From Styela clava (Eukaryota), in assembly GCF_964204865.1 (NCBI RefSeq), contig NC_135253.1:25172001-25236000 (forward strand): a stretch of DNA of 64,000 bases. Direction: 5' to 3'. Of the stretch, positions 21,374-63,998 are shown piece after piece. The notes under the pieces were generated by a model. That model was not told the DNA's origin. It ran no database searches and saw nothing but the letters and a program-made list of their open reading frames with translations. The translations under genes were made by a program, and so were the position numbers. Every line of letters begins with the position of its first letter. Position 1 is the stretch's first letter.

Positions 21374-23934
21374 TCACATTTTTGTTTCAAAGACGCAACG
21401 CCCTCCAACGATTATCCAATCCGAGCATTTCTTTAGCGATGAAACTCCCGGAATATCGAGACAGTTTTCAAAATCTTTTGCGTTCTCTTCGGGGACGAGT
21501 ATCCATGCTATATGGGCCTGTGCTGCGAGAACGCACCTCCCTTCCAAAGACCCGGACCCGTTCGGGGGATTCTTGAACCTACAACTTCCAATTGTGGCGG
21601 GCTGGAAAGAAAGGAATAAATTAGGTTCGAATAAGAATGATTTACAGTTGTCAGACGTAATATTCTGATGAAATGCTGTTCACTTACAGTCCGGGTTGCG
21701 CGATTCAAACTACTTTTTTTCCACTGTCCTATTTTAGCAGTTATTGTGGTCATTGTTTTGAATAATAGCGCCACCTCGTGACGAAAAAGTTCTGTGTGTA
21801 TCATCACTAGACGGCGTTGGAACATGTGACATATTTACAGAAATAAACCCGGAGTTAGCAGGAAGCCGGTTACAAACGTAGGGATTATACATATCAACAT
21901 CACAAAAAATATGCCGGGATTAAAGTTTAAATGTAATGTTGTTTCAGACATAGAAGACAACTGTTGGGCTTTATATCCCAACGGTATTGAAAATACTTCT
22001 TTATTTACGATACAGCAGGTATTCCATACTGTTCTATACGAGGTCTAAAATTGAGATAAATCACCCTTATAGCAGGAAACACGCACAAAATAAAAAAATA
22101 AACATAATGCCGTTTGAGACATAAAATATGAATTCCCAGCAGACCGGGGTCAGAAACTATTTGAAAAGAGGCCCGCTTGTACAAAATATGACTCATCATA
22201 TTCTAAAAGAATGCTTTTTAGTGCAATAAAGTCATTTAACTGTTCACTTTCAACTTACAATCGGATGAGCCAATGTTGCCTTCGGTGCTTCGGGTGTTCG
22301 CATCAGTAGGGCTGAGTGAACTTGTTCGACCTGCGAAGTAAGAGTTGGATTATAAAAATTAGTTGTTTATCTGTGTGTCTACTTTATGGAAGGGTAGCTG
22401 GATTTTATCAAGTTAACTCTAGTAATGCTAAATTTTGTGTGAAGGGCGTCGCACCGATAGCACTTTGATTCATTGTTTAACACTGGTTGGCCATTACACA
22501 GAAATTGCGATGTTTGGCGAAATTCGAATCAATGGCGAGTGCCGTGACTTTGTTGTTACAGCGTAGGACTCATCTATGTTGGCTTAGCATGCTAGAGCTG
22601 GGTGTCCTTCGTCCACCAACCCGGGACAAAAAATTTCTCTCTAAGCGTATGAACATAAATCTGTACCGGTATTGCTTATGATTAAATTCACTACACTATA
22701 TAAAATATCCTTACCGTATATTGTGTTTTGCACATCCCAACATCCCCAACAACAATCTCAGAAGCCTTCACTGATCGAGGTCCGTTCACAAATATCGGTA
22801 GAATAGTTCTCTGTTTTGACATTCCGCCGATGATTCGCTGCTGCGACCCGGACCTCACTAGATTTGTAATACCAATTCATATTTATGTTAGTATCTTGAC
22901 TGAGCAGATGATTCAATATTTAGAATCGATAAAAATTAAAGGGAGGGGGTGGTGGTTGGGGGGTAATTTCCGAATAACCAGACTGGTATTATAATAAAAC
23001 GCACAGGAGTTTTTATTGGTCTTAGCGCATTATGGTATGAATATTCGGATTCTAGGAAGGAAAGTGTCTTATAAGGCAAACGATGTTTGAGGATAAAAAA
23101 GATTTAGAGTCCACCTATGGTCCGTAAAATAGGGCAAGCCTTTATACAAGTGGAAAACACGCGCTCCCCACCGACGCATGATTATCTGCATTCTTTTTTT
23201 ACGGTTCTGGGTCCGTCCAGTTTATCGAATCAATTCGATTCTGGTTTGCGTTCGATTTAATATTCCTGAACTCAGAGGTGAATAAAATAGTAAATTTTTG
23301 GCTTATTTTAAGATTCTGGACTTGCGTTCTATTTGATTTGATATTTCTAAGTCAATAGTGGATAAGAATAGTAAATTCATTGGCTTATTTTTTGACTGAA
23401 CCAATCCATAGGATCATCACCCACCTTTGTCAGGCTGCACAGCCATGGGCATCACGTCCTCGATCATTGTCAGAGTCATTCCTTTCTTATTGTCGCCATC
23501 CCAGTTCTCTGTCTCCTCTGGTGGCGTGTCTCCGTATTCCACGACTCGTCTTGTTTCAATCTTGAATCTTAAAATATAGATATAATGTATTAACCGGGTA
23601 GAAGTCCATAAAGTCAGTAGGTGGGATGTCCTGGCTGGTAAAGCGTTAGTCTTAGCGGTTATGACATTGTAGGTTACACATCAGGGCGTCATGGTATGAT
23701 ACATTTTATAGGCAATGCCTTGTAGATTGCTCCAAAAACAGTAATTCTTACATATCGTTAAATATCAGTAGAAGTTCTTGTACAGGGCTTAGTTGGACAA
23801 GCGTTTTTCGGAGATGACGTAGTCGGAATATTCGTGGTGTGAGGTCCCGCAGGAAATTTATAAACTGAGACGGGCGTTGCTACAGTTACAGTGACGTAGG
23901 CAGTGACGAAAACGAGAAATTTTATTCCTTCCAT
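21374..23934 (-). CDS. Paralog 2 of the secreted six-Cys protein; exons 23934-~23752 (in-frame TAA at 23760-23758), ~23567-23425, 22857-22715, 22330-22259, 21601-21374; 5' junction unresolved, possible nonsense allele, pseudogene or assembly indel
   Basis: Signal peptide MEGIKFLVFVTAYVTVTVA; FKIETRRVVEYGDTPP aligns with paralog 1 VKIRNVISIKFDDTPP. C-terminus GDVGMCKTQYT-VEQVHSALLMRTPEAPKATLAHPI-PATIGSCRFKNPPNGSGSLEGRCVLAAQAHIAWILVPEENAKDFENCLDIPGVSSLKKCSDWIIVGGRCVFETKM*. All six Cys and the last two intron positions and phases match paralog 1. Confidence 0.78.
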
Positions 23935-26900
23935 TGTTGTAGGTTTGATCTTCGTGAAATATAGTAAATAATTTGTATTTTACGATTCTGAAGCTGAAAT
24001 ATATTATATATTATGTTAGTCGATAGGCGAATATTTCAAGAGTTTTGCTACACACTGACACAAATGTATTTCCGTAACATTTTTATGTCCTCTACTGTTG
24101 GGGGAAGTTCCTGCGTCCTCTTACAATTCTACATACCAACTGACTAGTTATTCCCTTTCAATGCGTCCTATTCAATGCAGATTCGTATGCTCATAATGCA
24201 AGGATGCTGTAGCAAGATTAAAGATAACTATCCCAAGCGATCCATCTATCTTGCTGCGCATTAAAACAAATCTATTTCTGTAACGTTTCGTCTGGCCAAT
24301 GTCAGACTTCTCCAGACAAGCATACCTGTCTACTGTAAACTGTTTCCCTGAGAAAGTCTGTCTTCGTTCAGACGAAAAGTTACAGAAATACATTTGTATT
24401 ATACGCAAAGCTGTAAAATCTGTCTGAGGCATCAAAACTTTCGTTTGGCACTAATGATAATTTATCTCTGATTTGCCAATAACAAGGAAGTCGATGCACG
24501 TTTAGCTTCACGAATCGATACTGAGATAATACTTGTCTGCAAAATACGAATAATTAGTTACAATAAAATATTTAATTAAAATTTCTTCAGCTAATTAAGA
24601 ATGTTTTGCACAAAACCTTGTTACATATGAGCCACAAGGTGACACGACGGCGCCGAACAATTTCCCAAATTGCACTTTTCTGGTGAATTACATGAATTAC
24701 AAGTAATATTATGTTGAACATGCCTTAATTGCCATCTATTTCGTGGCTTATGGTTTATAATACTCTGTAATGCGACACCAACTTCAAAGACGGCGATCAT
24801 TTTCATAATTCACTGAGCTATTATGGTTATGAATGCGCATTTTGTCACAATCAATTTTTTATTATATGTTTTCCATACTTGTTTAATTCATATCGCATTT
24901 ATAAGCCTTCCACTCTGAGCAAGGCATTGTATAAGCAACATTTGTTTGTTAACAGCTACTATATCTTGAAAATATAGATGTCTTTTGGGTTCGGCATCAC
25001 CAACCCAATTTATTTCACCCTTGGTGAGGTGATGGGTATGGTGTTCGCCTGCAATGCAAACAGTTGCATACAACGCGAAACAACTAAGCCATGCATAAGA
25101 GAAAGGAGCATTGATTGAGACTGTGCGGCCACTACGTTTTACCTGTCATGCGCGCGTGTTTTGTTGGTGCTAGATATATGTCGATATAAAATCTAATCAT
25201 AGAAACCTGGCAAATAAATCCTGTTGAATTTCTGTTGTTTTAATTTGGTGTTAACTGGAAGAGTCATAGCGAATATAACAATAGACGAAAGCTAGCCCAT
25301 ATAAAATTAGAGCGAGTTTCCTTTAATTTTTATTACTTTCTTTAAGATTTCATTAATATTAAACCAATCATGACTATTTATACATTCCAGTATTTTTTGG
25401 CTATTAGGCTAACAATACAAATTCGAATCTGAATCAATATCTTGTCACCTTATCACCGACAGTCACTAAGGTCTGTATCACGGCGAGAATACGGCAATGT
25501 GACTTATATTCACACATTTATACCTTCCAGCTATTCTTGAGAAATTAAAAATTCCCGAGTCCTTAAGTGACATCTGACTGTTGTTTATAGAGCAACACCT
25601 CAAAATTCAGAGCCAAATTTAGTTTTCCACTAATACTAAACGCTTTTTCAATAATTCGTGTTTTGCTCTTGAGATTCCACTCGAACTACTTGACTTTATT
25701 GAGAAAATTACCATTAAAGTCTATTTATTTCAGAGAACGTCAAAAACTGAAATTTATTTTAAAAAGTTATCATCGTATACTTCAAATTTTCGTAAGTTGT
25801 AATGCACTGCAATAATTCAATAGTTCCCATTTTTGAAATCCGTTTTTGATCAAATAAATGAAAAGCAGAAAACAGTTGCCGTTAAGTGAAAGATATAGAT
25901 GACTGGTCCAAAAATAGGTTCACGTGTTGTTCTCTGCATATCAGTAGGTGCTGGTCTGGGTCTTTGTACTAAGCGAATATGGGGAAAGGCTTGTAAAAAG
26001 GCATGGCAACCGCTTGGCAGAGAAAGAGTACCAACATAGCGTTGAAATGCCGACGTTCAGAGCGTATACATGAATGCAAACCGCATTTAGCTGTTCGCTC
26101 GGAATTGCAAGCGTGCTGATTTTTATTAAGCCTGAACACTGAGTTCGACGCGAAAATCCAAATTTCGTATCGACTTGAAAATCAAATTTGAAGTTCGACT
26201 CAAACTTAGGGTCCTGAGAGCAAACTTGTTCATGAAAGACCTGGAATCTTAGCAGTAATTCCACAAATTAAATTCGGAATTCGGCTTCAACGCATAAATT
26301 GGTCCGAAACGAAACGCTCGTTATTTGAAGACCTCAGTCTGAAGTTGAAAGATCAATTAAAAGCGAATATTTCAGATGCTTGATCAGAACCAAAACAAAA
26401 TTTCCGTGCAATTCTATACTCAACGAGAAGTTGACACTCTTACTTTTTATTATCCGTCCCTTCTCATCTACCTTGTCTTAGCTTTGAATCTCTGACAACG
26501 ACACAGACACACCAATGTGGCTTTTATATCCATATCTGCTCGTCAGATTTTTTCGCCAAAATACGTCGACCTGTCATTCACATTCATCAAATATTTCGCC
26601 CGCAGCGATATTTTCTGTCGTCTGTTTATGTGTAACATGCTTCTGAAATAATGTGTGACGACACAAACCTATTTTCTGAATTTAACTGTTACCTCTTATT
26701 TTATAATTATGACACAACAAAATAAAATCATTATCTTTACAAAATTTGATTGTTTAATTGCGTCATTCATAAAAAAACTAATTAATTTAAATCAATTGTC
26801 AATTAAACTAAACATTGAAATAGACAATTCACGCACTTTGTAGCGTTGGATGACGTCATAGAGTACACCAATATTAATTACGCTAATAAATTATTATGCT

Positions 26901-28223
26901 TGGTATTCGTGACAATGCAAAACTAGTCATGCATATCAAATCACGTGATTTATGATGCATCCATATTTGATTGGTGCAACAACAGGATATCCGGCTTTCA
27001 CTTCTCGCTAATGCAAAGGTTGGCCAATACTCTCTACATTAGCAAATAGCAGATATCCATAGAAATACCCGCTTTCTTTTCTTGCTAAATTTTTCCATGT
27101 TTTTTTTTTCAAGGAGCATTCCCTTTGTGAAACTTATTGTATTTGTAAGAAACATAAAATGCAAATGTCGCATTGATTAGTTGCCCTTATATTAAAAAAG
27201 GCTCATACTTTGATTTTGTCTTGTTTCAATCCCTAGTACTTCTTAGCACCTACCTTATAAAAGCAATTATTACTAATTAATAACGTCATAATTTTGTCTT
27301 TCTCTAAATTTCGGTTCACCAAAGAATATTCGCTTGCCAACCTCGCTAGCTTTCTCCAATATTTTCAATAAAATTCGTTTCGTAAAATTTTGTTCAGAGC
27401 CAGTGTTTGTGTTTAAATACTATTGTCAGATGATAGATTGTCGTTCTTTCTTGTTCTTTCTCAAAATTTGATCGGGTAGACGATATTGTACTGAAAATTA
27501 CTACACCAGATACGATACCAGTGGCTTCAGTGCCTTGTTCGGAACAAAAGTCATTAAATGCGCCGTATAAAAAACGAAGTTAGTAATCCTAGCACAGTGG
27601 TCGTTCTTCTAATTCACTCATGTATTTTCACATTGCTTTTTTTGTCTTCCCCCATAACTTGCTATTTTCCCCTTTAAATGGTGTCTCTGGAATTACGAAA
27701 TTATAACTTCAATTCTCCTTAGTTATTTCCAGAGACATTACCTAATTTCTGATCTCATTGTTTGTTTGTTTTACTATATTTAGTCTCTACTTTAAGAGAA
27801 AATCAAGTGTTTTGTTTATAAAATCCCCCGATTTAGGTAATATCCATAATTATAAACCTATATTAATCAAGTTTCATAGTTTCCACATGACCATTTCTTC
27901 GTTAATAGCCGGACCTTGTGACTTGACAATTCTTTGGATCAACGTAGGAAGTCCCCTATAGCTTTGCGCAATAAATGAGCCTGATATAAAATTTATTCAT
28001 GTAGGCTGAATGGCCCAGTTGTCAAAGTTTTGGACTTGGACCATCGCGGGGGCAGGTTAAATATACCCGCCACTCCATAGTGTAATAAATTCGGTGGCAT
28101 TCCGCTCCTTGGGGGCAAAGTAGTAGCTTTCTTCATACATATCAGTGTCCGTCCAGTACGGAATGGAGGAATAAAAACCTCATATTAAAGAATTATTCCA
28201 AATCGACTTTTTGGCGTCTAGAT

Positions 28224-28432
28224 CTGGCATGGGCAAACTACAACCCGCGGGCCAAATCAGGCCCATTGGTTGATTCAATCTGGCCCGCCTGATGCTCTGA
28301 TGCTGCCACGATCAAACTAAAACCAAATTTTAATGAGGCTTATTGTTTTCCACTTTTGGTTTTGTAACACTGTAAATATTGTTCATAAAATGCAACTTTC
28401 TACGTCACACTCACATGGCGCACCTCTGGTCT
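28224..28432 (+). mobile_element. hAT family B partial copy
   Basis: CTGGCATGGGCAAACTACAACCCGCGGGCCAAATC... shares blocks with 29390-29689. Confidence 0.72.
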
Positions 28433-29389
28433 CGATCGTTCAAAAAAGTTTTACATTCACGATTTCCCCGTTCGTCATAATAATATTTTTGTTTATTTAA
28501 ATCTCTCAAAATATCCACAAGTGGGCGTCGAGAGATCTTGAAAAAGTAAAATCTGGAACGAAGCCGAATTCATCGTAACAGCCACGAGGTTTTAAAAATA
28601 ACTTTCCGATCTAAAATTATATGAGATTCGAATTAATCACATCACGATGTTTCGAGACAACGAGTATTTGTCACGCGATGACACGCAGAGCTCGAAATGA
28701 ACAATAAATTTTTTACTTTTTTCTACTTATTAGTAATCTCACGCTTTGAAAATAAACGTTGAATTGTTGTATTGTATCTTATAAGGTTTCCAAGCATAAC
28801 TATGTTTTTTATTTTTACTTTGTTCAATTTGTGATAAGATAGCCTAGTACGTCACGGGTAATTACTATCCTGTTATCTTCGCTGCGTAAAGATCTTGAAA
28901 CTGCTGGCTTTTTCGATTTCGAATTTTTCTTTTTCATCCCATATCGAGTTCGACACTTGTGTATTTCTTGTCACCAAGATTTTTTAGACCCAAATCAATA
29001 CACCACAGTAGAGATATGCAGCAAATGAGTTTCGGTATTTTCAGTTTCCAAAGTAAATTTGTCGTTTTCACCTAATTCATAATTTTCGGCGTCAGTGCGC
29101 CACTTTTCTTGGAGAAAAATAGCAAGTAATTTTAGCCAAATAGTAAAAAACCGAAACTGCAAAAAATTATTTTTTTTCTGTTCAAACAAGATGATGCGCA
29201 AAAATCGAATAGCTAAGTGCTTGGAATTGATCCAATCTTAAACGTTTGCCTTTTCGGTTTCTGAAACGAAATTGTGTGTTAGATCTAAATCCCGACTTCT
29301 CTTTTTTCTCTGAACTATGTGCAAGAAGCCATTGATAACTGAGAAATTACTAAACTTGCGGTATTTGTTGCTCTTACACTGTCTTAGCA

Positions 29390-29689
29390 CTGACATGGGC
29401 AAATTATGGCTCTCGGATCGAATCCGGCCCGTTAGGTAATTCAATCTGGCCCGCCTGATGCTGCCACAACCAAACTGAAATCTAATTTTGATGTTTCAGT
29501 TAAAAATGAATCAAGAAATTTGTTAAGATTGCGATTAAATTTAATCTTTTTTTTTGTTTTCCACTTTTGCTTTTGTAACACTGTAAATATTGTGCATAAA
29601 ATGTAACTTTTTACGTCACATTCACATGGCCCGCCAGTCTAGGCGGGCAAAATCTTTGGCCCGTGATTCGGAAACTTTGCCCATCTTTG
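29390..29689 (+). mobile_element. hAT family B near-full copy
   Basis: Termini ..CATGGGCAAA / TTTGCCCATC.., internal GGCCCG repeats typical of hAT subterminal sites. Confidence 0.75.
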
Positions 29690-31023
29690 GTATAGCAAGT
29701 ACGAATGCGTAGAGCGCACTTTGAGTGAAGTTGTGGACCCGACCCTAACTAACAGTTAATCAGACATAGATATTCTGAAATGTATTTAATTTATTAAAAA
29801 ATGCAACGTTGAGTTCACAAAGATGAAAAATATTCCGATTATAAATAATAAATATAGCTCATAATATTCAATATATTTAACAATTTGATACAAATGAAAT
29901 ATAAATTCTGTTATAGTGGTAAACTGTTTAATAATCTGGAACATATTTTATTTATAAAATGCTTTCGCATTTTTGCTCTACTAACACATTCGTAATTTCT
30001 ATTGTTTAATAAGCTAATTTTTTGTTCCAAAAAAACTTCAAGTTATTTTCATTTCAAAATTTGTTGGTTTGTTCAAAAAGTCACGACGATTAAAATATAT
30101 TCACCAAATCGATGAAACAATTTGAAGACGTGAAATTGTTTTTTGTATGATTCCAAATAAAGGTGTCATGCAGTATACAATTTTGATAAATTCAGGCGCA
30201 CTTGATATTCGGTATTCGAATTATAAGACTCACGGGGATTTGTTACAACAAGTATTCATTGCAAAACATTTTTTGGAAACTCATAGATCAGATTTCATAA
30301 GACCGCAAAAATTAAGCGTTCGCGCTAATAAACACATGAATATAGTACAGTGGTAATCAACTCTGGGTAAATAAGAAATAAATAAAGATAATAACTGTGC
30401 AGATAGTACGTATAATAAGTTATGTTTGAAAATAAAAGATGCATTAATGCTATATATGTGCCAGTGTGGCGTGGTTGTGGCAAAAGTTGCTGAGGAGGGG
30501 AGTTTCCCGCAATCGGTATAAATAGTCAATGTCAAATGGGATATTTTTATTTAAACTTTGTTCAACTTATTACCGCGTCAAATAAACACGTAATATTGGA
30601 TAAATACAAGTTTTTAAAAATACCAATTTTGAGATATTTTCCTAAATATTCTCTCCAAATAAGGCGGTTGTAATAAGTTTGGACTTGACGAGGAGGACCA
30701 AGTATCGGAGGCCGATACCCGATTCATATATCACAATGAAGCTAATAGGATTGGTTTTATGAGCCAATAGGTCAAATGAAAATAACTTTTTCAAAAAAAT
30801 ATATAAATTGGAGCGACTTTTTTTTTATAAGCGACCATGTAAGCATCTGCTTATGTCTGATATCACTCTGATTTAGAAAAATAATTGACAATATTTTGTA
30901 CAAATTCACGATGTCGGTTCGTTATATTGCTCATTGAAATTACTTCTACTTTAACCCATAAACCCGTATTCGCGTTATAAGTCATTATCGATGATAATTT
31001 AGGCGATCGCAGTTACGAATTTT

Positions 31024-33423
31024 TCATCTATTTTTCTTCAGTACGCAATATCCAGGTACAATAATATAGTCCCAACACTGCATGTCCGATGAGTTAGCAA
31101 TCGCAAAACAATTTTCTCTGTTATGATGGGCCATGTCAGCCTGTGTTGCTCTCACCCATGCACCATGCGGATAGCCAACCACCACACATTCCTCGTTGCC
31201 AGACCCTTGAGGAGGGTTCGAGAATCTGCACTCTATGTCTCTCGTGGCCTGAAAGATTAGATTGAAGTTTGATTAATGTGAAATATGAGTAATTTTACTG
31301 TTATTTTATATTAGTTTCATGAATGTTAAAAAGAATATGAGTTTGTCAATGCTTCTAGTCTTCATGAAGAATATTCAACATTTTATACGAATAATGAATG
31401 AAAATAATATAGAATTTATACATCAAGATATCTCTACTAATCTCTGGAAGTCTACTAGTTCCAATTCAATTATAGAGAATAAACCATTTTAGTAACTTTG
31501 CAGTAATTTGGATATCTTGCCCACAGCAGTAAATATACTCAACTGCTAAAATCGCATCTCGTATATTTTTCCTACTGTGATTTCTACTCGCTAAAGTCAG
31601 TATACGTTCTGTCACACTACATAAAACAAGCAAATATGCATTCAAAAAATGTTGTTGATGTCGCTAAGGCTTTAAATACTTACAAGTGCTTGATACAGAG
31701 TTACTTTCCGGTTCGCACTTCCTCTTGGAAAATATAAATATCCTTCGTTGATTCGTTCGGCCTTTAAAGAAAAATATTATATTAGTGTTGTAATGTGTCG
31801 ACTGGCTTGTACACAGAATGGCCCGAAGAGAAGATCTAAAACAGCGTTTCCTAACCAGTCGGTTGCGTTTACATTATTAGTTAATTGCATAGGGATACAT
31901 TGTTAATTTTCTCATACATGAACATTTCATTGTGGGTCGCACAGAAAAAAAAGGGCAATAAAAGTGGGTCGCAAACTAGTCGTTAGTAACTCTGTTATGC
32001 GCAAATCTTTTTACACATCATTAGTAACTCTTTTATCGCTCTCGCTTTTTTAAGTTGCTCAGAGCAAACGGTATTAAAATCTATATAGCTGATAACGCGA
32101 CAGTGGTATCTTGCAAATGTTCTATCAGAAATTGACAATTTTAACTTTTCTGTCAGTACTAATTCCACTTCAAAGTGAGATAATGCGGCCTTGATTTTAG
32201 AAAGAAAACTCAAATAAAAACGGGACACTTATCTTCGCAGTAATGCTTTTGTGAGGAATGAAACACTTACTGATTTTACAATTGTGCTGCAAGCTCCTAT
32301 ATCGCCAGTGATGGGAATCTTCTGCGATGAGATCAGAGCTCGAGCTGTTGGGGTCGAACTAGGACGTTTAGAAATGGCTGAATCAAGGCCGGGTGGGGGT
32401 ATAGCTTGTCTGAAGCCTAAAAATCTGGCCCCACTTCCGACTCTGGCTGTTGTTGTTGTTGTTGTTGCTCGTGTAGTGCTGGGGGGTGGAGGGGGAGTGT
32501 CGTCAAATTTAATCGAAATAACGTTTCTTATTTTTACTCCACGTCTCAACTGTAGAAGTCTCGATATGATTGAATTCCATACATGGGAATCGGCACTCGT
32601 TATCAAACCATTTCTCGCCTGTTAAATATTGAAACATAGTTAATTACTTATTTTTTATATTAACCTTTTGTGACTATTGATCCCTTTCCGGGGACTTTTA
32701 ACACTCATTCCCCCCTGTTTATCATTACAGTGGTTTTATTGCGTTATTTTGAATAGTAAATTCCAAATTATCTTATGATCAAACAATTTATGCATTCTAG
32801 CATTGTGGTCCCACTCTAACTGACCTGTGACCCCATTGCTGTGCGGGTGTATCCAGTTCGAATCCGAGTCTATGCAAACATTCAAAGTTCTTAATCATGG
32901 TGTGATATGTTAGATATTTCTTGGGAAGCAGATATTACAAGTGAAAAAAAGCCAAAAATAGCCCCAGTACGGTTGGTTCAAATTTCTTTCGTATAAACCA
33001 GTATCTGACTGGAGTTGCAATCCCGTAAAAACACACATTTTCGTGGGCCTAACCTATTGGCCAATCCCCAGTTCACTCCTACCGTTGAAACAATATGTAT
33101 TATTCGACTAATCATGTCAAATCTAAACTCTGTTCAATATTAGGAGTTTTTTGGAACCTTAACTTGTCGGAATATTCTGTAATTCATTTTTCTCCGAACG
33201 AATTTGCAACAAATAGTACATGAGCTTTCTCTAGCTCTGATCTCCCAACAAATATGAAAAACAAACAGCTACTCACCACCATGTTTATCGACTTAGGCGG
33301 ATCGATAGGAAATTTCGGCTGCGGGGTTGTCGGCCTTGGAATATTTTTGATCCCGACAACCTGAGGTGAAGGCGATGCTCGAACAAGTGACACAACCAGA
33401 AGTATATTTAGAAGGTGATTCAT
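31024..33423 (-). CDS. Secreted pre-pro-protein, 265 aa, with neurotrophin/Spaetzle-like six-Cys C-terminal domain (paralog 1); coding exons 33423-33277, 32618-32271, 31761-31684, 31248-31024
   Basis: Four exons joined by phase-0 GT-AG introns (gtgagt, gtaagt, gtaagt) give an uninterrupted ORF. It has a signal peptide MNHLLNILLVVSLVRA and a Pro/Thr-rich pro-region, then GDIGACSTIVKS-AERINEGYLYFPRGSANRKVTLYQAL-ATRDIECRFSNPPQGSGNEECVVVGYPHGAWVRATQADMAHHNRENCFAIANSSDMQCWDYIIVPGYCVLKKNR*. A paralog 7 kb away supports the model. The gene model is well supported; the family call is inference. Confidence 0.85.

Positions 33424-43874: not shown

Positions 43875-63998
<20,124 letters not shown>

What the first reader, a model, noticed from the sequence alone, without database searches (positions are those of the whole stretch)
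21374..33423. Tandem pair of unrecognised secreted neurotrophin/Spaetzle-like ligands hidden antisense in the non-coding region
Seen: two - strand multi-exon paralogs, mostly invisible in the ORF track. Each has a signal peptide, a low-complexity pro-region and a ~105-aa domain with six conserved Cys and conserved intron positions. Recalled knowledge: mature NGF reads R|SSSHPIFHRGEFSVC...KCRDPNPVDSG...WRFIRIDTACVC. These proteins read R|ALISSQKIPITGDIGAC and R|SVKASEIVVGDVGMC (Arg 17 and 15 residues before Cys1, plus a G-acidic-hydrophobic-small-hydrophobic-C motif). They continue CRFSNPPQGSG / CRFKNPPNGSG and end WDYIIVPGYCV / SDWIIVGGRCV; paralog 1 has the same W-to-C spacing as NGF. Inference: divergent neurotrophin/Spaetzle-superfamily pro-ligands activated by cleavage at a single Arg. 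Ascidians are generally reported to lack canonical neurotrophins and Trk. If this is an ascidian, these may be overlooked relics or a new ligand family, possibly for Toll-like, p75-like or RTK receptors.
Basis: partly seen in the sequence, partly recalled or inferred. Interest (0 to 1): 0.9.

Follow-up and report, generated by a model that had tools for sequence, protein, structure and literature searches.

The report
Sea-squirt NGF-fold ligand gene pair
Two neighbouring genes of the sea squirt Styela clava, lying backwards inside the otoferlin gene, encode precursor proteins (one clearly secreted) whose cysteine-rich end is predicted to fold like nerve growth factor without matching it in sequence, which gives a testable ligand candidate in an animal group said to have lost neurotrophins.

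Summary
Two minus-strand, multi-exon paralogs exist at 31024-33423 and 21374-23934. All quoted motifs are present. Both have six conserved Cys and two shared phase-0 intron positions.

The genes are not unannotated. RefSeq lists them as uncharacterized Styela clava LOC120325670 and LOC120325669.

No sequence method names the domain. Pfam, including NGF, Spaetzle and IL-17, gives nothing, and PDB sequence searches give no neurotrophin.

One AlphaFold2 model of paralog 1 has pLDDT about 70-88 over residues 156-265. It was built from a 7-row alignment, and only about 2 of 5 models look confident. It shows four long strands in two hairpins.

All 25 neurotrophin entries head the structural search (Z 6.0-7.2, rmsd 2.5-3.2 Å over 82-91 residues). 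IL-17, coagulogen, PTTH and Spaetzle follow at Z 3.5-4.5.

The canonical knot cannot form, because the C-terminal C-x-C is missing.

The family has four loci in this genome and one fragment from elsewhere.

Cleavage at a single Arg, dimerisation, expression and the receptor are all untested. The 5' end of paralog 2 is unresolved in this assembly.

The scan has already noted NGF-like genes elsewhere in this genome (s1-807447, s1-815906, s1-819832).

Verdict: a new variant of the NGF-like fold, supported by prediction only.

The parts
33277..33423 (-). Paralog 1 (LOC120325670) exon 1: start codon, signal peptide (MNHLLNILLVVSLVRA|S) and start of the Pro-rich pro-region
   Evidence: 100% match to P0004 aa 1-49; GTGAGT donor, phase 0
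32271..32618 (-). Paralog 1 exon 2: low-complexity pro-region (P5, T-run), KR and single-Arg sites, first strand of the domain with Cys1 (GDIGAC)
   Evidence: P0004 aa 50-165; acag acceptor, GTAAGT donor
31684..31761 (-). Paralog 1 exon 3: 26-codon middle exon (tip and return strand of hairpin 1), invisible in the ORF list
   Evidence: P0004 aa 166-191; aaag acceptor, GTAAGT donor
31024..31248 (-). Paralog 1 exon 4: Cys2-Cys6, CRFSNPPQGSG loop, WDYIIVPGYCV strand, stop codon
   Evidence: AF2 strands E210-225 and E247-263
23800..23934 (-). Paralog 2 (LOC120325669) signal-peptide-like first exon of the older RefSeq model; link to the rest unresolved in this assembly
   Evidence: P0005 aa 1-45; no GT donor in the required phase; the next exon of the old model is absent from the genome
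23425..23567 (-). Paralog 2 pro-region exon; holds the start codon of the current RefSeq model (23479)
   Evidence: P0005 aa 84-131 and P0002 aa 1-18
22715..22857 (-). Paralog 2 exon with RIIGG...GPR|SVKASEIVVGDVGMC: end of the pro-region and Cys1
22259..22330 (-). Paralog 2 24-codon middle exon (hairpin 1)
   Evidence: cag acceptor, GTAAGT donor
21374..21601 (-). Paralog 2 last exon: Cys2-Cys6, CRFKNPPNGSG loop, SDWIIVGGRCV strand, stop codon

Best explanation
These are two members of a small gene family (four loci in Styela clava, plus one fragment from another sample). They encode precursor proteins built as a signal peptide (shown for paralog 1 only), a disordered low-complexity pro-region, and a C-terminal domain of about 110 residues with six Cys.

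The domain most likely adopts the neurotrophin-type cystine-knot-cytokine fold: two long twisted beta-hairpins tied at one end. Its disulfide set is changed. Cys1, Cys2 and Cys6 fall where NGF has Cys15, Cys58 and Cys108. The C-terminal C-x-C is reduced to one Cys and the Cys80 position is empty. Cys4 and Cys5 sit together at the tip of hairpin 2. At most two disulfides can therefore tie the base, giving an 'open' knot.

Inferred, not shown: the pro-region is removed by a proprotein convertase or another Arg-specific protease. The mature domain then acts outside the cell as a signalling ligand, probably as a dimer, on a receptor that is neither Trk nor p75.

Both genes lie antisense inside the otoferlin gene.
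For: Gene structure:
- The models are identical to RefSeq proteins.
- Splice sites are canonical and introns are phase 0.
- The signal peptide and Pro/Thr-rich linker can be read directly from the sequence.

Family:
- The six Cys are conserved in paralog 1, paralog 2 and the chromosome-2 paralog. Cys3-Cys6 are conserved in the fourth locus and in P0003.

Fold:
- AF2 model m9984e4e2dc5f has pLDDT 70-88 over residues 156-265, with strands 159-174, 183-200, 210-225 and 247-263.
- An exhaustive VIA-align search of 48,161 chains puts NGF first (Z 6.9, rmsd 2.8 Å, 83 residues) and proNGF second (Z 6.4). The other named hits down to about rank 30 are nearly all cystine-knot cytokines.
- All 25 neurotrophin entries score Z 6.0-7.2.
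- Most of Foldseek's top 25 or so listed hits are neurotrophins.

Processing:
- The chromosome-2 paralog carries RVKR and RRDRR 5-12 residues before Cys1, the position expected for convertase processing.

Location:
- Otoferlin FerI and FerB exons lie upstream, and its C2 exons downstream, on the plus strand.
Against: - The fold rests on one prediction from a 7-row alignment. The five models have mean pLDDT from 50.6 down to 32.2.
- Paralog 2 modelled with 5 rows gave pLDDT 30.
- Z about 7 is within what models without true relatives often reach, according to the tool's own note. No Foldseek hit reaches E 0.001.
- There is no sequence or profile similarity to NGF, Spaetzle or IL-17.
- The CRxxNP match is to a loop that, from my memory of BDNF and NT-3, is not conserved among neurotrophins.
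- The homodimer test gave no answer.
- RNA evidence could not be obtained.
- Paralog 2 lacks a linked signal peptide in this assembly.
- No canonical furin site precedes the domain in either window gene.
Confidence: 0.55

Rival explanations
1. A lineage-specific, secreted Cys-rich protein family of some other fold (for example a PAN/apple-like or novel disulfide-rich domain). On this reading the NGF-like AlphaFold model is an artefact of a shallow alignment and of the network's memory of elongated beta-hairpin cytokines.
For: - Only about 2 of 5 models look confident, and the paralog 2 model failed.
- Best Z about 7 and Foldseek E at or above 0.07 are not significant on their own.
- The language-model look-alike search pointed weakly to PAN/apple clusters, with scores 0.84-0.88.
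- No profile similarity to any cystine-knot family.
- The family is confined to Styela and one fragment.
Against: - The Cys spacing does not fit PAN/apple (no C-x3-C-x5-C core), and Pfam PAN models did not hit.
- The atlas scores lie in the range that shuffled sequences reach.
- The structural hit list is strikingly specific: all 25 neurotrophin entries first, then mainly other cystine-knot cytokines. These cover 82-91 of about 108 residues at 2.5-3.2 Å.
- The model places Cys1, Cys2, Cys3 and Cys6 at one end, as in a knot.
Confidence: 0.3
2. A member of the cystine-knot-cytokine fold that descends from, or converged on, a family other than neurotrophin or Spaetzle. Candidates are IL-17 (already known with incomplete knots), Trunk/PTTH and coagulogen-like proteins.
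For: - IL-17A/F (Z 4.4-4.5), coagulogen (Z 4.5, rmsd 3.1 Å, 80 residues) and PTTH (Z 3.9-4.2) are the next best structural matches.
- IL-17 ligands with lost knot disulfides are documented, and tunicate IL-17s lack Cys 1/4 (PMC11087794).
Against: - Neurotrophins score 1.5-2.7 Z higher, with lower rmsd and longer alignments.
- There is no Pfam IL17 hit.
- IL-17, PTTH and Spaetzle keep the C-terminal C-x-C that is missing here (my knowledge of those families).
Confidence: 0.1
3. One or both loci are decaying or non-functional copies whose open frames persist by chance or recent duplication. There is then no functional ligand.
For: - The paralog 2 signal exon cannot be joined in frame in this assembly, and its RefSeq model changed from 278 to 165 aa.
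- The fourth locus shows only a last exon, with no matching upstream exon phase.
- No RNA data were obtained.
Against: - Paralog 1 is intact, with four canonical introns and 265 codons.
- The paralogs are only about 40% identical, yet all Cys, the hydrophobic strand patterns and the intron positions are kept. That argues for long-term purifying selection.
- A related fragment exists in another sample (P0003).
Confidence: 0.05

Closest known systems
Vertebrate neurotrophins (NGF, BDNF, NT-3, NT-4; Pfam PF00243)
   Same: - Precursor layout: signal peptide, pro-region, then a C-terminal domain of about 110-120 residues.
- Predicted two-hairpin fold superposes on NGF residues 14-114 at 2.5-3.2 Å over 82-91 residues, Z 6.0-7.2.
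- A Cys about 16 residues from the putative mature N-terminus, a Cys closing hairpin 1, and an aromatic-I-x-[IV]...C-V last strand with NGF's W-to-C spacing in paralog 1.
   Different: - No HMM or profile similarity; 13-16% identity in structural alignments.
- The C-x-C of Cys V/VI is reduced to one Cys and the Cys IV position is empty. An extra Cys pair sits at the hairpin-2 tip, so there is no true knot.
- The loop between the strands of hairpin 2 is longer.
- The domain is split by two introns.
- No furin site directly before the domain in the window genes.
- Trk and p75 marker domains were not found in the genome.
Spaetzle / Drosophila neurotrophins and horseshoe-crab coagulogen
   Same: Secreted pro-ligands activated by cleavage after Arg, with an NGF-like cystine-knot fold. 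Coagulogen aligns at Z 4.5, rmsd 3.1 Å, 80 residues.
   Different: Spaetzle scores only Z 2.8-3.5. PF16077 has no hit in the genome or the proteins. Spaetzle keeps the C-terminal C-C-x-C (my knowledge).
IL-17 family (incomplete cystine knots)
   Same: It sets the precedent for a cystine-knot-cytokine fold that lacks one knot disulfide, including in tunicates (PMC11087794). It is the third-best structural class here (Z 4.0-4.5).
   Different: Lower Z and higher rmsd. No Pfam IL17 match. IL-17 loses Cys 1/4 and keeps C-x-C, whereas this family keeps Cys1 and lacks C-x-C.
Other NGF/Spaetzle-like loci flagged by this scan in the same genome (s1-807447, s1-815906, s1-819832)
   Same: Same species and the same kind of claim: a secreted Cys-rich precursor with a predicted NGF-like fold and an open knot. 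By its length (981 letters), s1-807447 probably is the chromosome-2 paralog of this family.
   Different: My family profile finds only four loci genome-wide. The 10- and 11-gene clusters are therefore not linked to this family by sequence. The by-sequence look-up was blank.

Membership tests
Neurotrophin (NGF) family, Pfam PF00243 | Significant match to the NGF profile or signature | tested here: not met
   hmmscan of P0001, P0002, P0003 and all exons gave no NGF hit at E<=10. PF00243 against the whole genome gave no hit at these loci. The family profile against PDB sequences found no neurotrophin at E<=10.
Neurotrophin (NGF) family, Pfam PF00243 | Six Cys forming the I-IV, II-V, III-VI knot, with the C-terminal C-x-C | tested here: not met
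   The last strand has a single Cys (GYCVL / GRCVF / SHCKL). No Cys lies 12 residues after Cys3. Six Cys are present but their spacing is incompatible with the canonical knot.
Neurotrophin (NGF) family, Pfam PF00243 | NGF fold: two long twisted beta-hairpins tied at one end | tested here: met
   This is a prediction only. The AF2 domain has pLDDT 70-88. Neurotrophins are top in Foldseek and VIA-align, Z 6.0-7.2, rmsd 2.5-3.2 Å.
Neurotrophin (NGF) family, Pfam PF00243 | Pro-domain removed at a furin R-x-K/R-R site just before the mature domain | tested here: inconclusive
   The window genes have only KR (24 residues before Cys1 in paralog 1) and single Arg (17 and 15 residues before Cys1). The chromosome-2 paralog has RVKR and RRDRR 5-12 residues before Cys1.
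Neurotrophin (NGF) family, Pfam PF00243 | Non-covalent homodimer | tested here: inconclusive
   Complex prediction on residues 143-265, two copies, returned 'no answer'. The ESMFold2 fold had pLDDT under 50.
Neurotrophin (NGF) family, Pfam PF00243 | Signals through Trk and p75NTR | tested here: inconclusive
   The Trk LRRCT_2 domain (PF16920) and the p75 TM domain (PF18422) gave no hit over cut-off in the genome. These are short domains searched exon by exon, so power is low. The literature reports that Ciona lacks the system (PMC2772990).
Spaetzle, Pfam PF16077 | Match to the Spaetzle profile; C-terminal C-C-x-C | tested here: not met
   No hit (the control found the family nowhere, so that search is uninformative). 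Structural Z is only 2.8-3.5.
IL-17, Pfam PF06083 | Match to the IL17 profile; Cys pairs on strands 2 and 4 with C-x-C | tested here: not met
   No Pfam hit. Z 4.0-4.5, below neurotrophins.
Cystine-knot cytokine fold (superfamily level) | Four-stranded, two-hairpin elongated monomer with disulfides clustered at the base | tested here: met
   This is a prediction only. Outside a few low-Z unrelated rows, the VIA-align list consists of NGF, IL-17, coagulogen, PTTH, DAN/gremlin, sclerostin, TGF-beta, GDNF, PDGF/VEGF, Norrin, noggin and VWF-CTCK.

The most novel reading that the evidence does not exclude
These genes are true, much-diverged descendants of the ancestral chordate neurotrophin/Spaetzle-type ligand. 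They were retained in stolidobranch ascidians after loss of Trk and p75, have a re-wired ('open') knot, and signal through a different receptor class such as a TLR or TNFR-like protein. Tunicates would then not have lost the ligand side of the system.
Probability: 0.2. Interest if true: 0.85.

Novelty: new variant of a known kind. Interest (0 to 1): 0.6.

Why it matters
Published work states that Ciona lacks neurotrophins, Trk and p75NTR (PMC2772990). Loss of Trk-family components in Ciona has also been proposed (PMC13663574).

A secreted NGF-fold protein family in an ascidian would give a concrete candidate ligand for asking two questions:
- Did the ligand outlive its receptors?
- Which receptor does it use?

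It would also add a second example, after IL-17, of this fold surviving without a complete knot.

The family has no name in any database and is annotated only as 'uncharacterized', so the fold assignment is new information. It rests on prediction alone. The scan has also met the same theme at other loci of this genome, so this pair is one piece of a wider Styela picture rather than a unique find.

Tried and rejected
Tools that gave nothing:
- Pfam on every exon and on the RefSeq proteins gave nothing meaningful.
- PDB sequence searches with two profiles gave nothing relevant.
- PF00243 against the genome gave two sub-threshold hits elsewhere (C18, C6), taken as chance.
- PF16077 gave no hit, and its control was uninformative.
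- The first AF2 job (paralog 2, 5 rows) gave pLDDT 30 and was discarded.
- The search for homologous proteins with the full-length alignment was swamped by low-complexity words (8000 candidates). It returned only the two Styela proteins.
- The same tool with the last-exon profile returned only P0003.
- The same tool with the chromosome-2 exon returned nothing.
- The ESM Atlas gave a weak PAN/apple lead (0.84-0.88). I rejected it on Cys spacing and the lack of a Pfam PAN hit.
- Complex prediction on the domain homodimer returned 'no answer', which is no evidence either way.
- The findings look-up by sequence was blank.

Folds considered from the sequence and dropped, because the Cys patterns or motifs do not fit and Pfam is silent: CUB (C-x-x-D-Y-[LV]-x-[IV] motif), LCCL, C-type lectin, cystatin.

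Full report
**What is there**

The window is Styela clava chromosome piece C4:25172001-25236000. Reading the minus strand in three frames shows two related genes.

A HMMER scan of 1.84 billion representative proteins with the aligned last exons found three proteins:
- XP_039247698 (LOC120325670), which is paralog 1.
- XP_077968344 / XP_039247697 (LOC120325669), which is paralog 2.
- A 76-residue unnamed fragment from a Logan assembly (P0003).

Mapping these proteins back onto the window revealed a short middle exon in each gene that the ORF list hides.

Paralog 1 has four exons: 33423-33277, 32618-32271, 31761-31684 and 31248-31024. All splice sites are GT-AG and all introns are phase 0. The product has 265 codons and is identical to XP_039247698.2.

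The domain-coding exons of paralog 2 are 22857-22715, 22330-22259 and 21601-21374, preceded by a pro-region exon at 23567-23425.

The two introns inside the domain lie 5-6 residues after Cys1 and 6 residues before Cys2 in both genes.

Two corrections apply:
- The genes are annotated in RefSeq, though only as 'uncharacterized'.
- The signal-peptide exon of paralog 2 (23934-23800) has no in-frame donor in this assembly. The next exon of the older 278-residue model is absent from the genome. The current 165-residue model starts downstream, without a signal peptide.

**Family size**

A profile of the last exons finds only four loci in the 377-Mb genome:
- The two window genes.
- A last-exon-only match at C4:25151880-25152026, same strand, 41 kb from paralog 2.
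- A gene on C2 at 610.8-611.8 kb.

The C2 gene keeps all six Cys, has Cys1 to Cys2 in one exon, and carries RVKR and RRDRR 5-12 residues before Cys1.

Outside Styela clava only P0003 turned up.

**What sequence methods say**

They say nothing:
- Pfam, which includes NGF, Spaetzle, IL17 and PAN, has no hit at E<=10 on the proteins or exons.
- The NGF model run over the genome does not touch these loci.
- The Spaetzle model gave no hit anywhere, and its control was uninformative.
- Family profiles find no neurotrophin among PDB sequences.
- A language-model look-alike search gave only weak PAN/apple leads, in the range shuffled sequences reach.

**What the predicted structure says**

A first AlphaFold2 run on paralog 2 with five rows failed (pLDDT 30).

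A second run used paralog 1 with seven rows, adding exon-level rows from the C2 and C4 paralogs by reference (alignment A5). It gave a disordered N-terminal 155 residues and an ordered domain at 156-265. The domain has pLDDT about 70-88 and four long strands: 159-174, 183-200, 210-225 and 247-263. From the mean pLDDT of the five models (50.6 down to 32.2), I estimate that about two of them are confident for the domain.

Foldseek against the PDB returned neurotrophins as almost all of its first 25 or so listed hits. The scores are weak: E 0.07-0.5, probability up to 0.92, TM up to 0.58.

The exhaustive VIA-align search of 48,161 chains gave this ranking:

| Match | Z | Detail |
|---|---|---|
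| NGF | 6.9 | rmsd 2.8 Å, 83 residues; model 158-265 on NGF 14-114 |
| proNGF | 6.4 | |
| IL-17A | 4.5 | |
| Coagulogen | 4.5 | |
| PTTH | 3.9 | |
| Gremlin, NBL1 | 3.8 | |
| Spaetzle | 3.5 | |

Sclerostin, TGF-beta, AMH, VWF-CTCK, GDF15, noggin, GDNF, PDGF and Norrin follow.

In the second look, all 25 neurotrophin entries score Z 6.0-7.2, with rmsd 2.5-3.2 Å over 82-91 residues for the best entries. The next class, IL-17, scores 4.5.

The tool warns that Z about 7 alone can be a common arrangement. What carries weight here is three things together:
- The specificity of the hit list.
- The coverage of nearly the whole domain.
- The agreement with the cysteine positions.

**Cysteines**

From the aligned ranges, Cys1 (C159) falls on NGF Cys15 and Cys6 (C259) on Cys108. 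W250 falls on Trp99. Cys2 (C198) closes hairpin 1 as Cys58 does. Cys3 (C212) opens hairpin 2 after a loop four residues longer than NGF's 59-67 loop. The NGF numbering is from my own knowledge. No residue-level alignment or model coordinates were available.

There is no second Cys two residues after Cys6, and none where Cys80 would be. Cys4 (C238) and Cys5 (C249) lie in or next to the long loop at the tip of hairpin 2.

The simplest reading has three parts:
- A Cys4-Cys5 staple at the tip.
- Two disulfides among Cys1, Cys2, Cys3 and Cys6 at the base.
- As a result, an open knot rather than a true one.

This is inference from strand registers, not a measured connectivity. I cannot decide between the two.

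**Processing, dimer, receptor**

Neither window gene has an R-x-K/R-R site before the domain. Paralog 1 has KR 24 residues, and a single Arg 17 residues, before Cys1. Paralog 2 has a single Arg 15 residues before Cys1. The C2 paralog's canonical sites make convertase processing plausible for the family, but cleavage at the single Arg is unproven.

The homodimer test returned 'no answer'.

Marker domains of Trk (LRRCT_2) and p75 (TM) were not found in the genome. This fits reports that Ciona lacks the system, but these searches have low power.

**Context**

Otoferlin exons lie on the plus strand at window 44.8-64 kb. The FerB and FerI exons of the same ferlin lie upstream, at C4:25115886 and C4:25095768. 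The two genes, and the third chromosome-4 copy, therefore sit antisense inside the otoferlin gene. That explains why they looked like 'non-coding' sequence.

**Relation to earlier scan notes**

Three other findings in this genome describe NGF/Spaetzle-like genes. By its size, s1-807447 probably is the C2 paralog. The two large clusters (s1-815906, s1-819832) are not connected to this family by my profile searches. I treated all three as leads only.

**Limits**

- No tunicate genomes other than this one were searchable.
- No NGF sequences were available from any tool, so no profile-profile test was run.
- No self-joined spliced model was sent to any tool. The RefSeq proteins, which equal the spliced products, were used instead. 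Exons were joined only inside the sandbox, to count frame and stops.

**Verdict**

- The NGF-like fold is the best current reading, with confidence about 0.55.
- Membership in the neurotrophin or Spaetzle families fails on sequence and on the knot.
- Activation, dimerisation, expression and receptor are all open.

I class it as a new variant of a known kind, with interest 0.6.

Noticed in passing
window 21374-33423 relative to G000:C4:25095768-25116050 and window 44797-63886: The two genes, and a third copy upstream of the window, lie antisense inside the otoferlin gene. Its FerI and FerB exons are upstream and its C2 exons downstream, all on the plus strand.
   Followed up: partly
G000:C4:25151880-25152026 (L009:5875-6054, minus strand), about 20 kb before the window start: A divergent third copy of the last exon, with Cys3-Cys6 and a C-x-D-W-I-x-L-P-G-x-C strand. 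No upstream exon with a matching splice phase was found, so it may be a pseudogene or have a different structure.
   Followed up: partly
G000:C2:610842-611816 (L008:4840-5816, minus strand): A fourth family member on another chromosome. Cys1 to Cys2 lie in one exon, a single intron sits between Cys2 and Cys3, and canonical RVKR and RRDRR sites lie just before Cys1. It is probably the locus of scan note s1-807447.
   Followed up: partly
window 23567-23934: Paralog 2's signal-peptide exon runs into a stop without a usable donor. The 38-codon exon of the older RefSeq model (XP_039247697.1 aa 46-83) is absent from this assembly. This may be a structural difference between assemblies or haplotypes, or a 5'-damaged allele.
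   Followed up: partly
window 32271-32618 and 33277-33423: Allelic differences in the pro-region of paralog 1 between RefSeq versions: a Thr-run one residue shorter, and T/P at residue 32 in XP_039247698.1.
   Followed up: no
window 22817-22840: The pro-region of paralog 2 contains QQR-IIGG, which resembles the activation-site motif of clip/chymotrypsin-type zymogens and the R-VGG site of Spaetzle (my knowledge). It lies 43 residues before Cys1. It may be coincidence or an alternative cleavage site.
   Followed up: no
G000:C18:19569797-19569904 and G000:C6:11132393-11132476: The only genome matches to the Pfam NGF model. Both are below cut-off (18.7 and 15 bits) and one contains stops. They are taken as chance, so there is no canonical neurotrophin gene in this assembly.
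   Followed up: no
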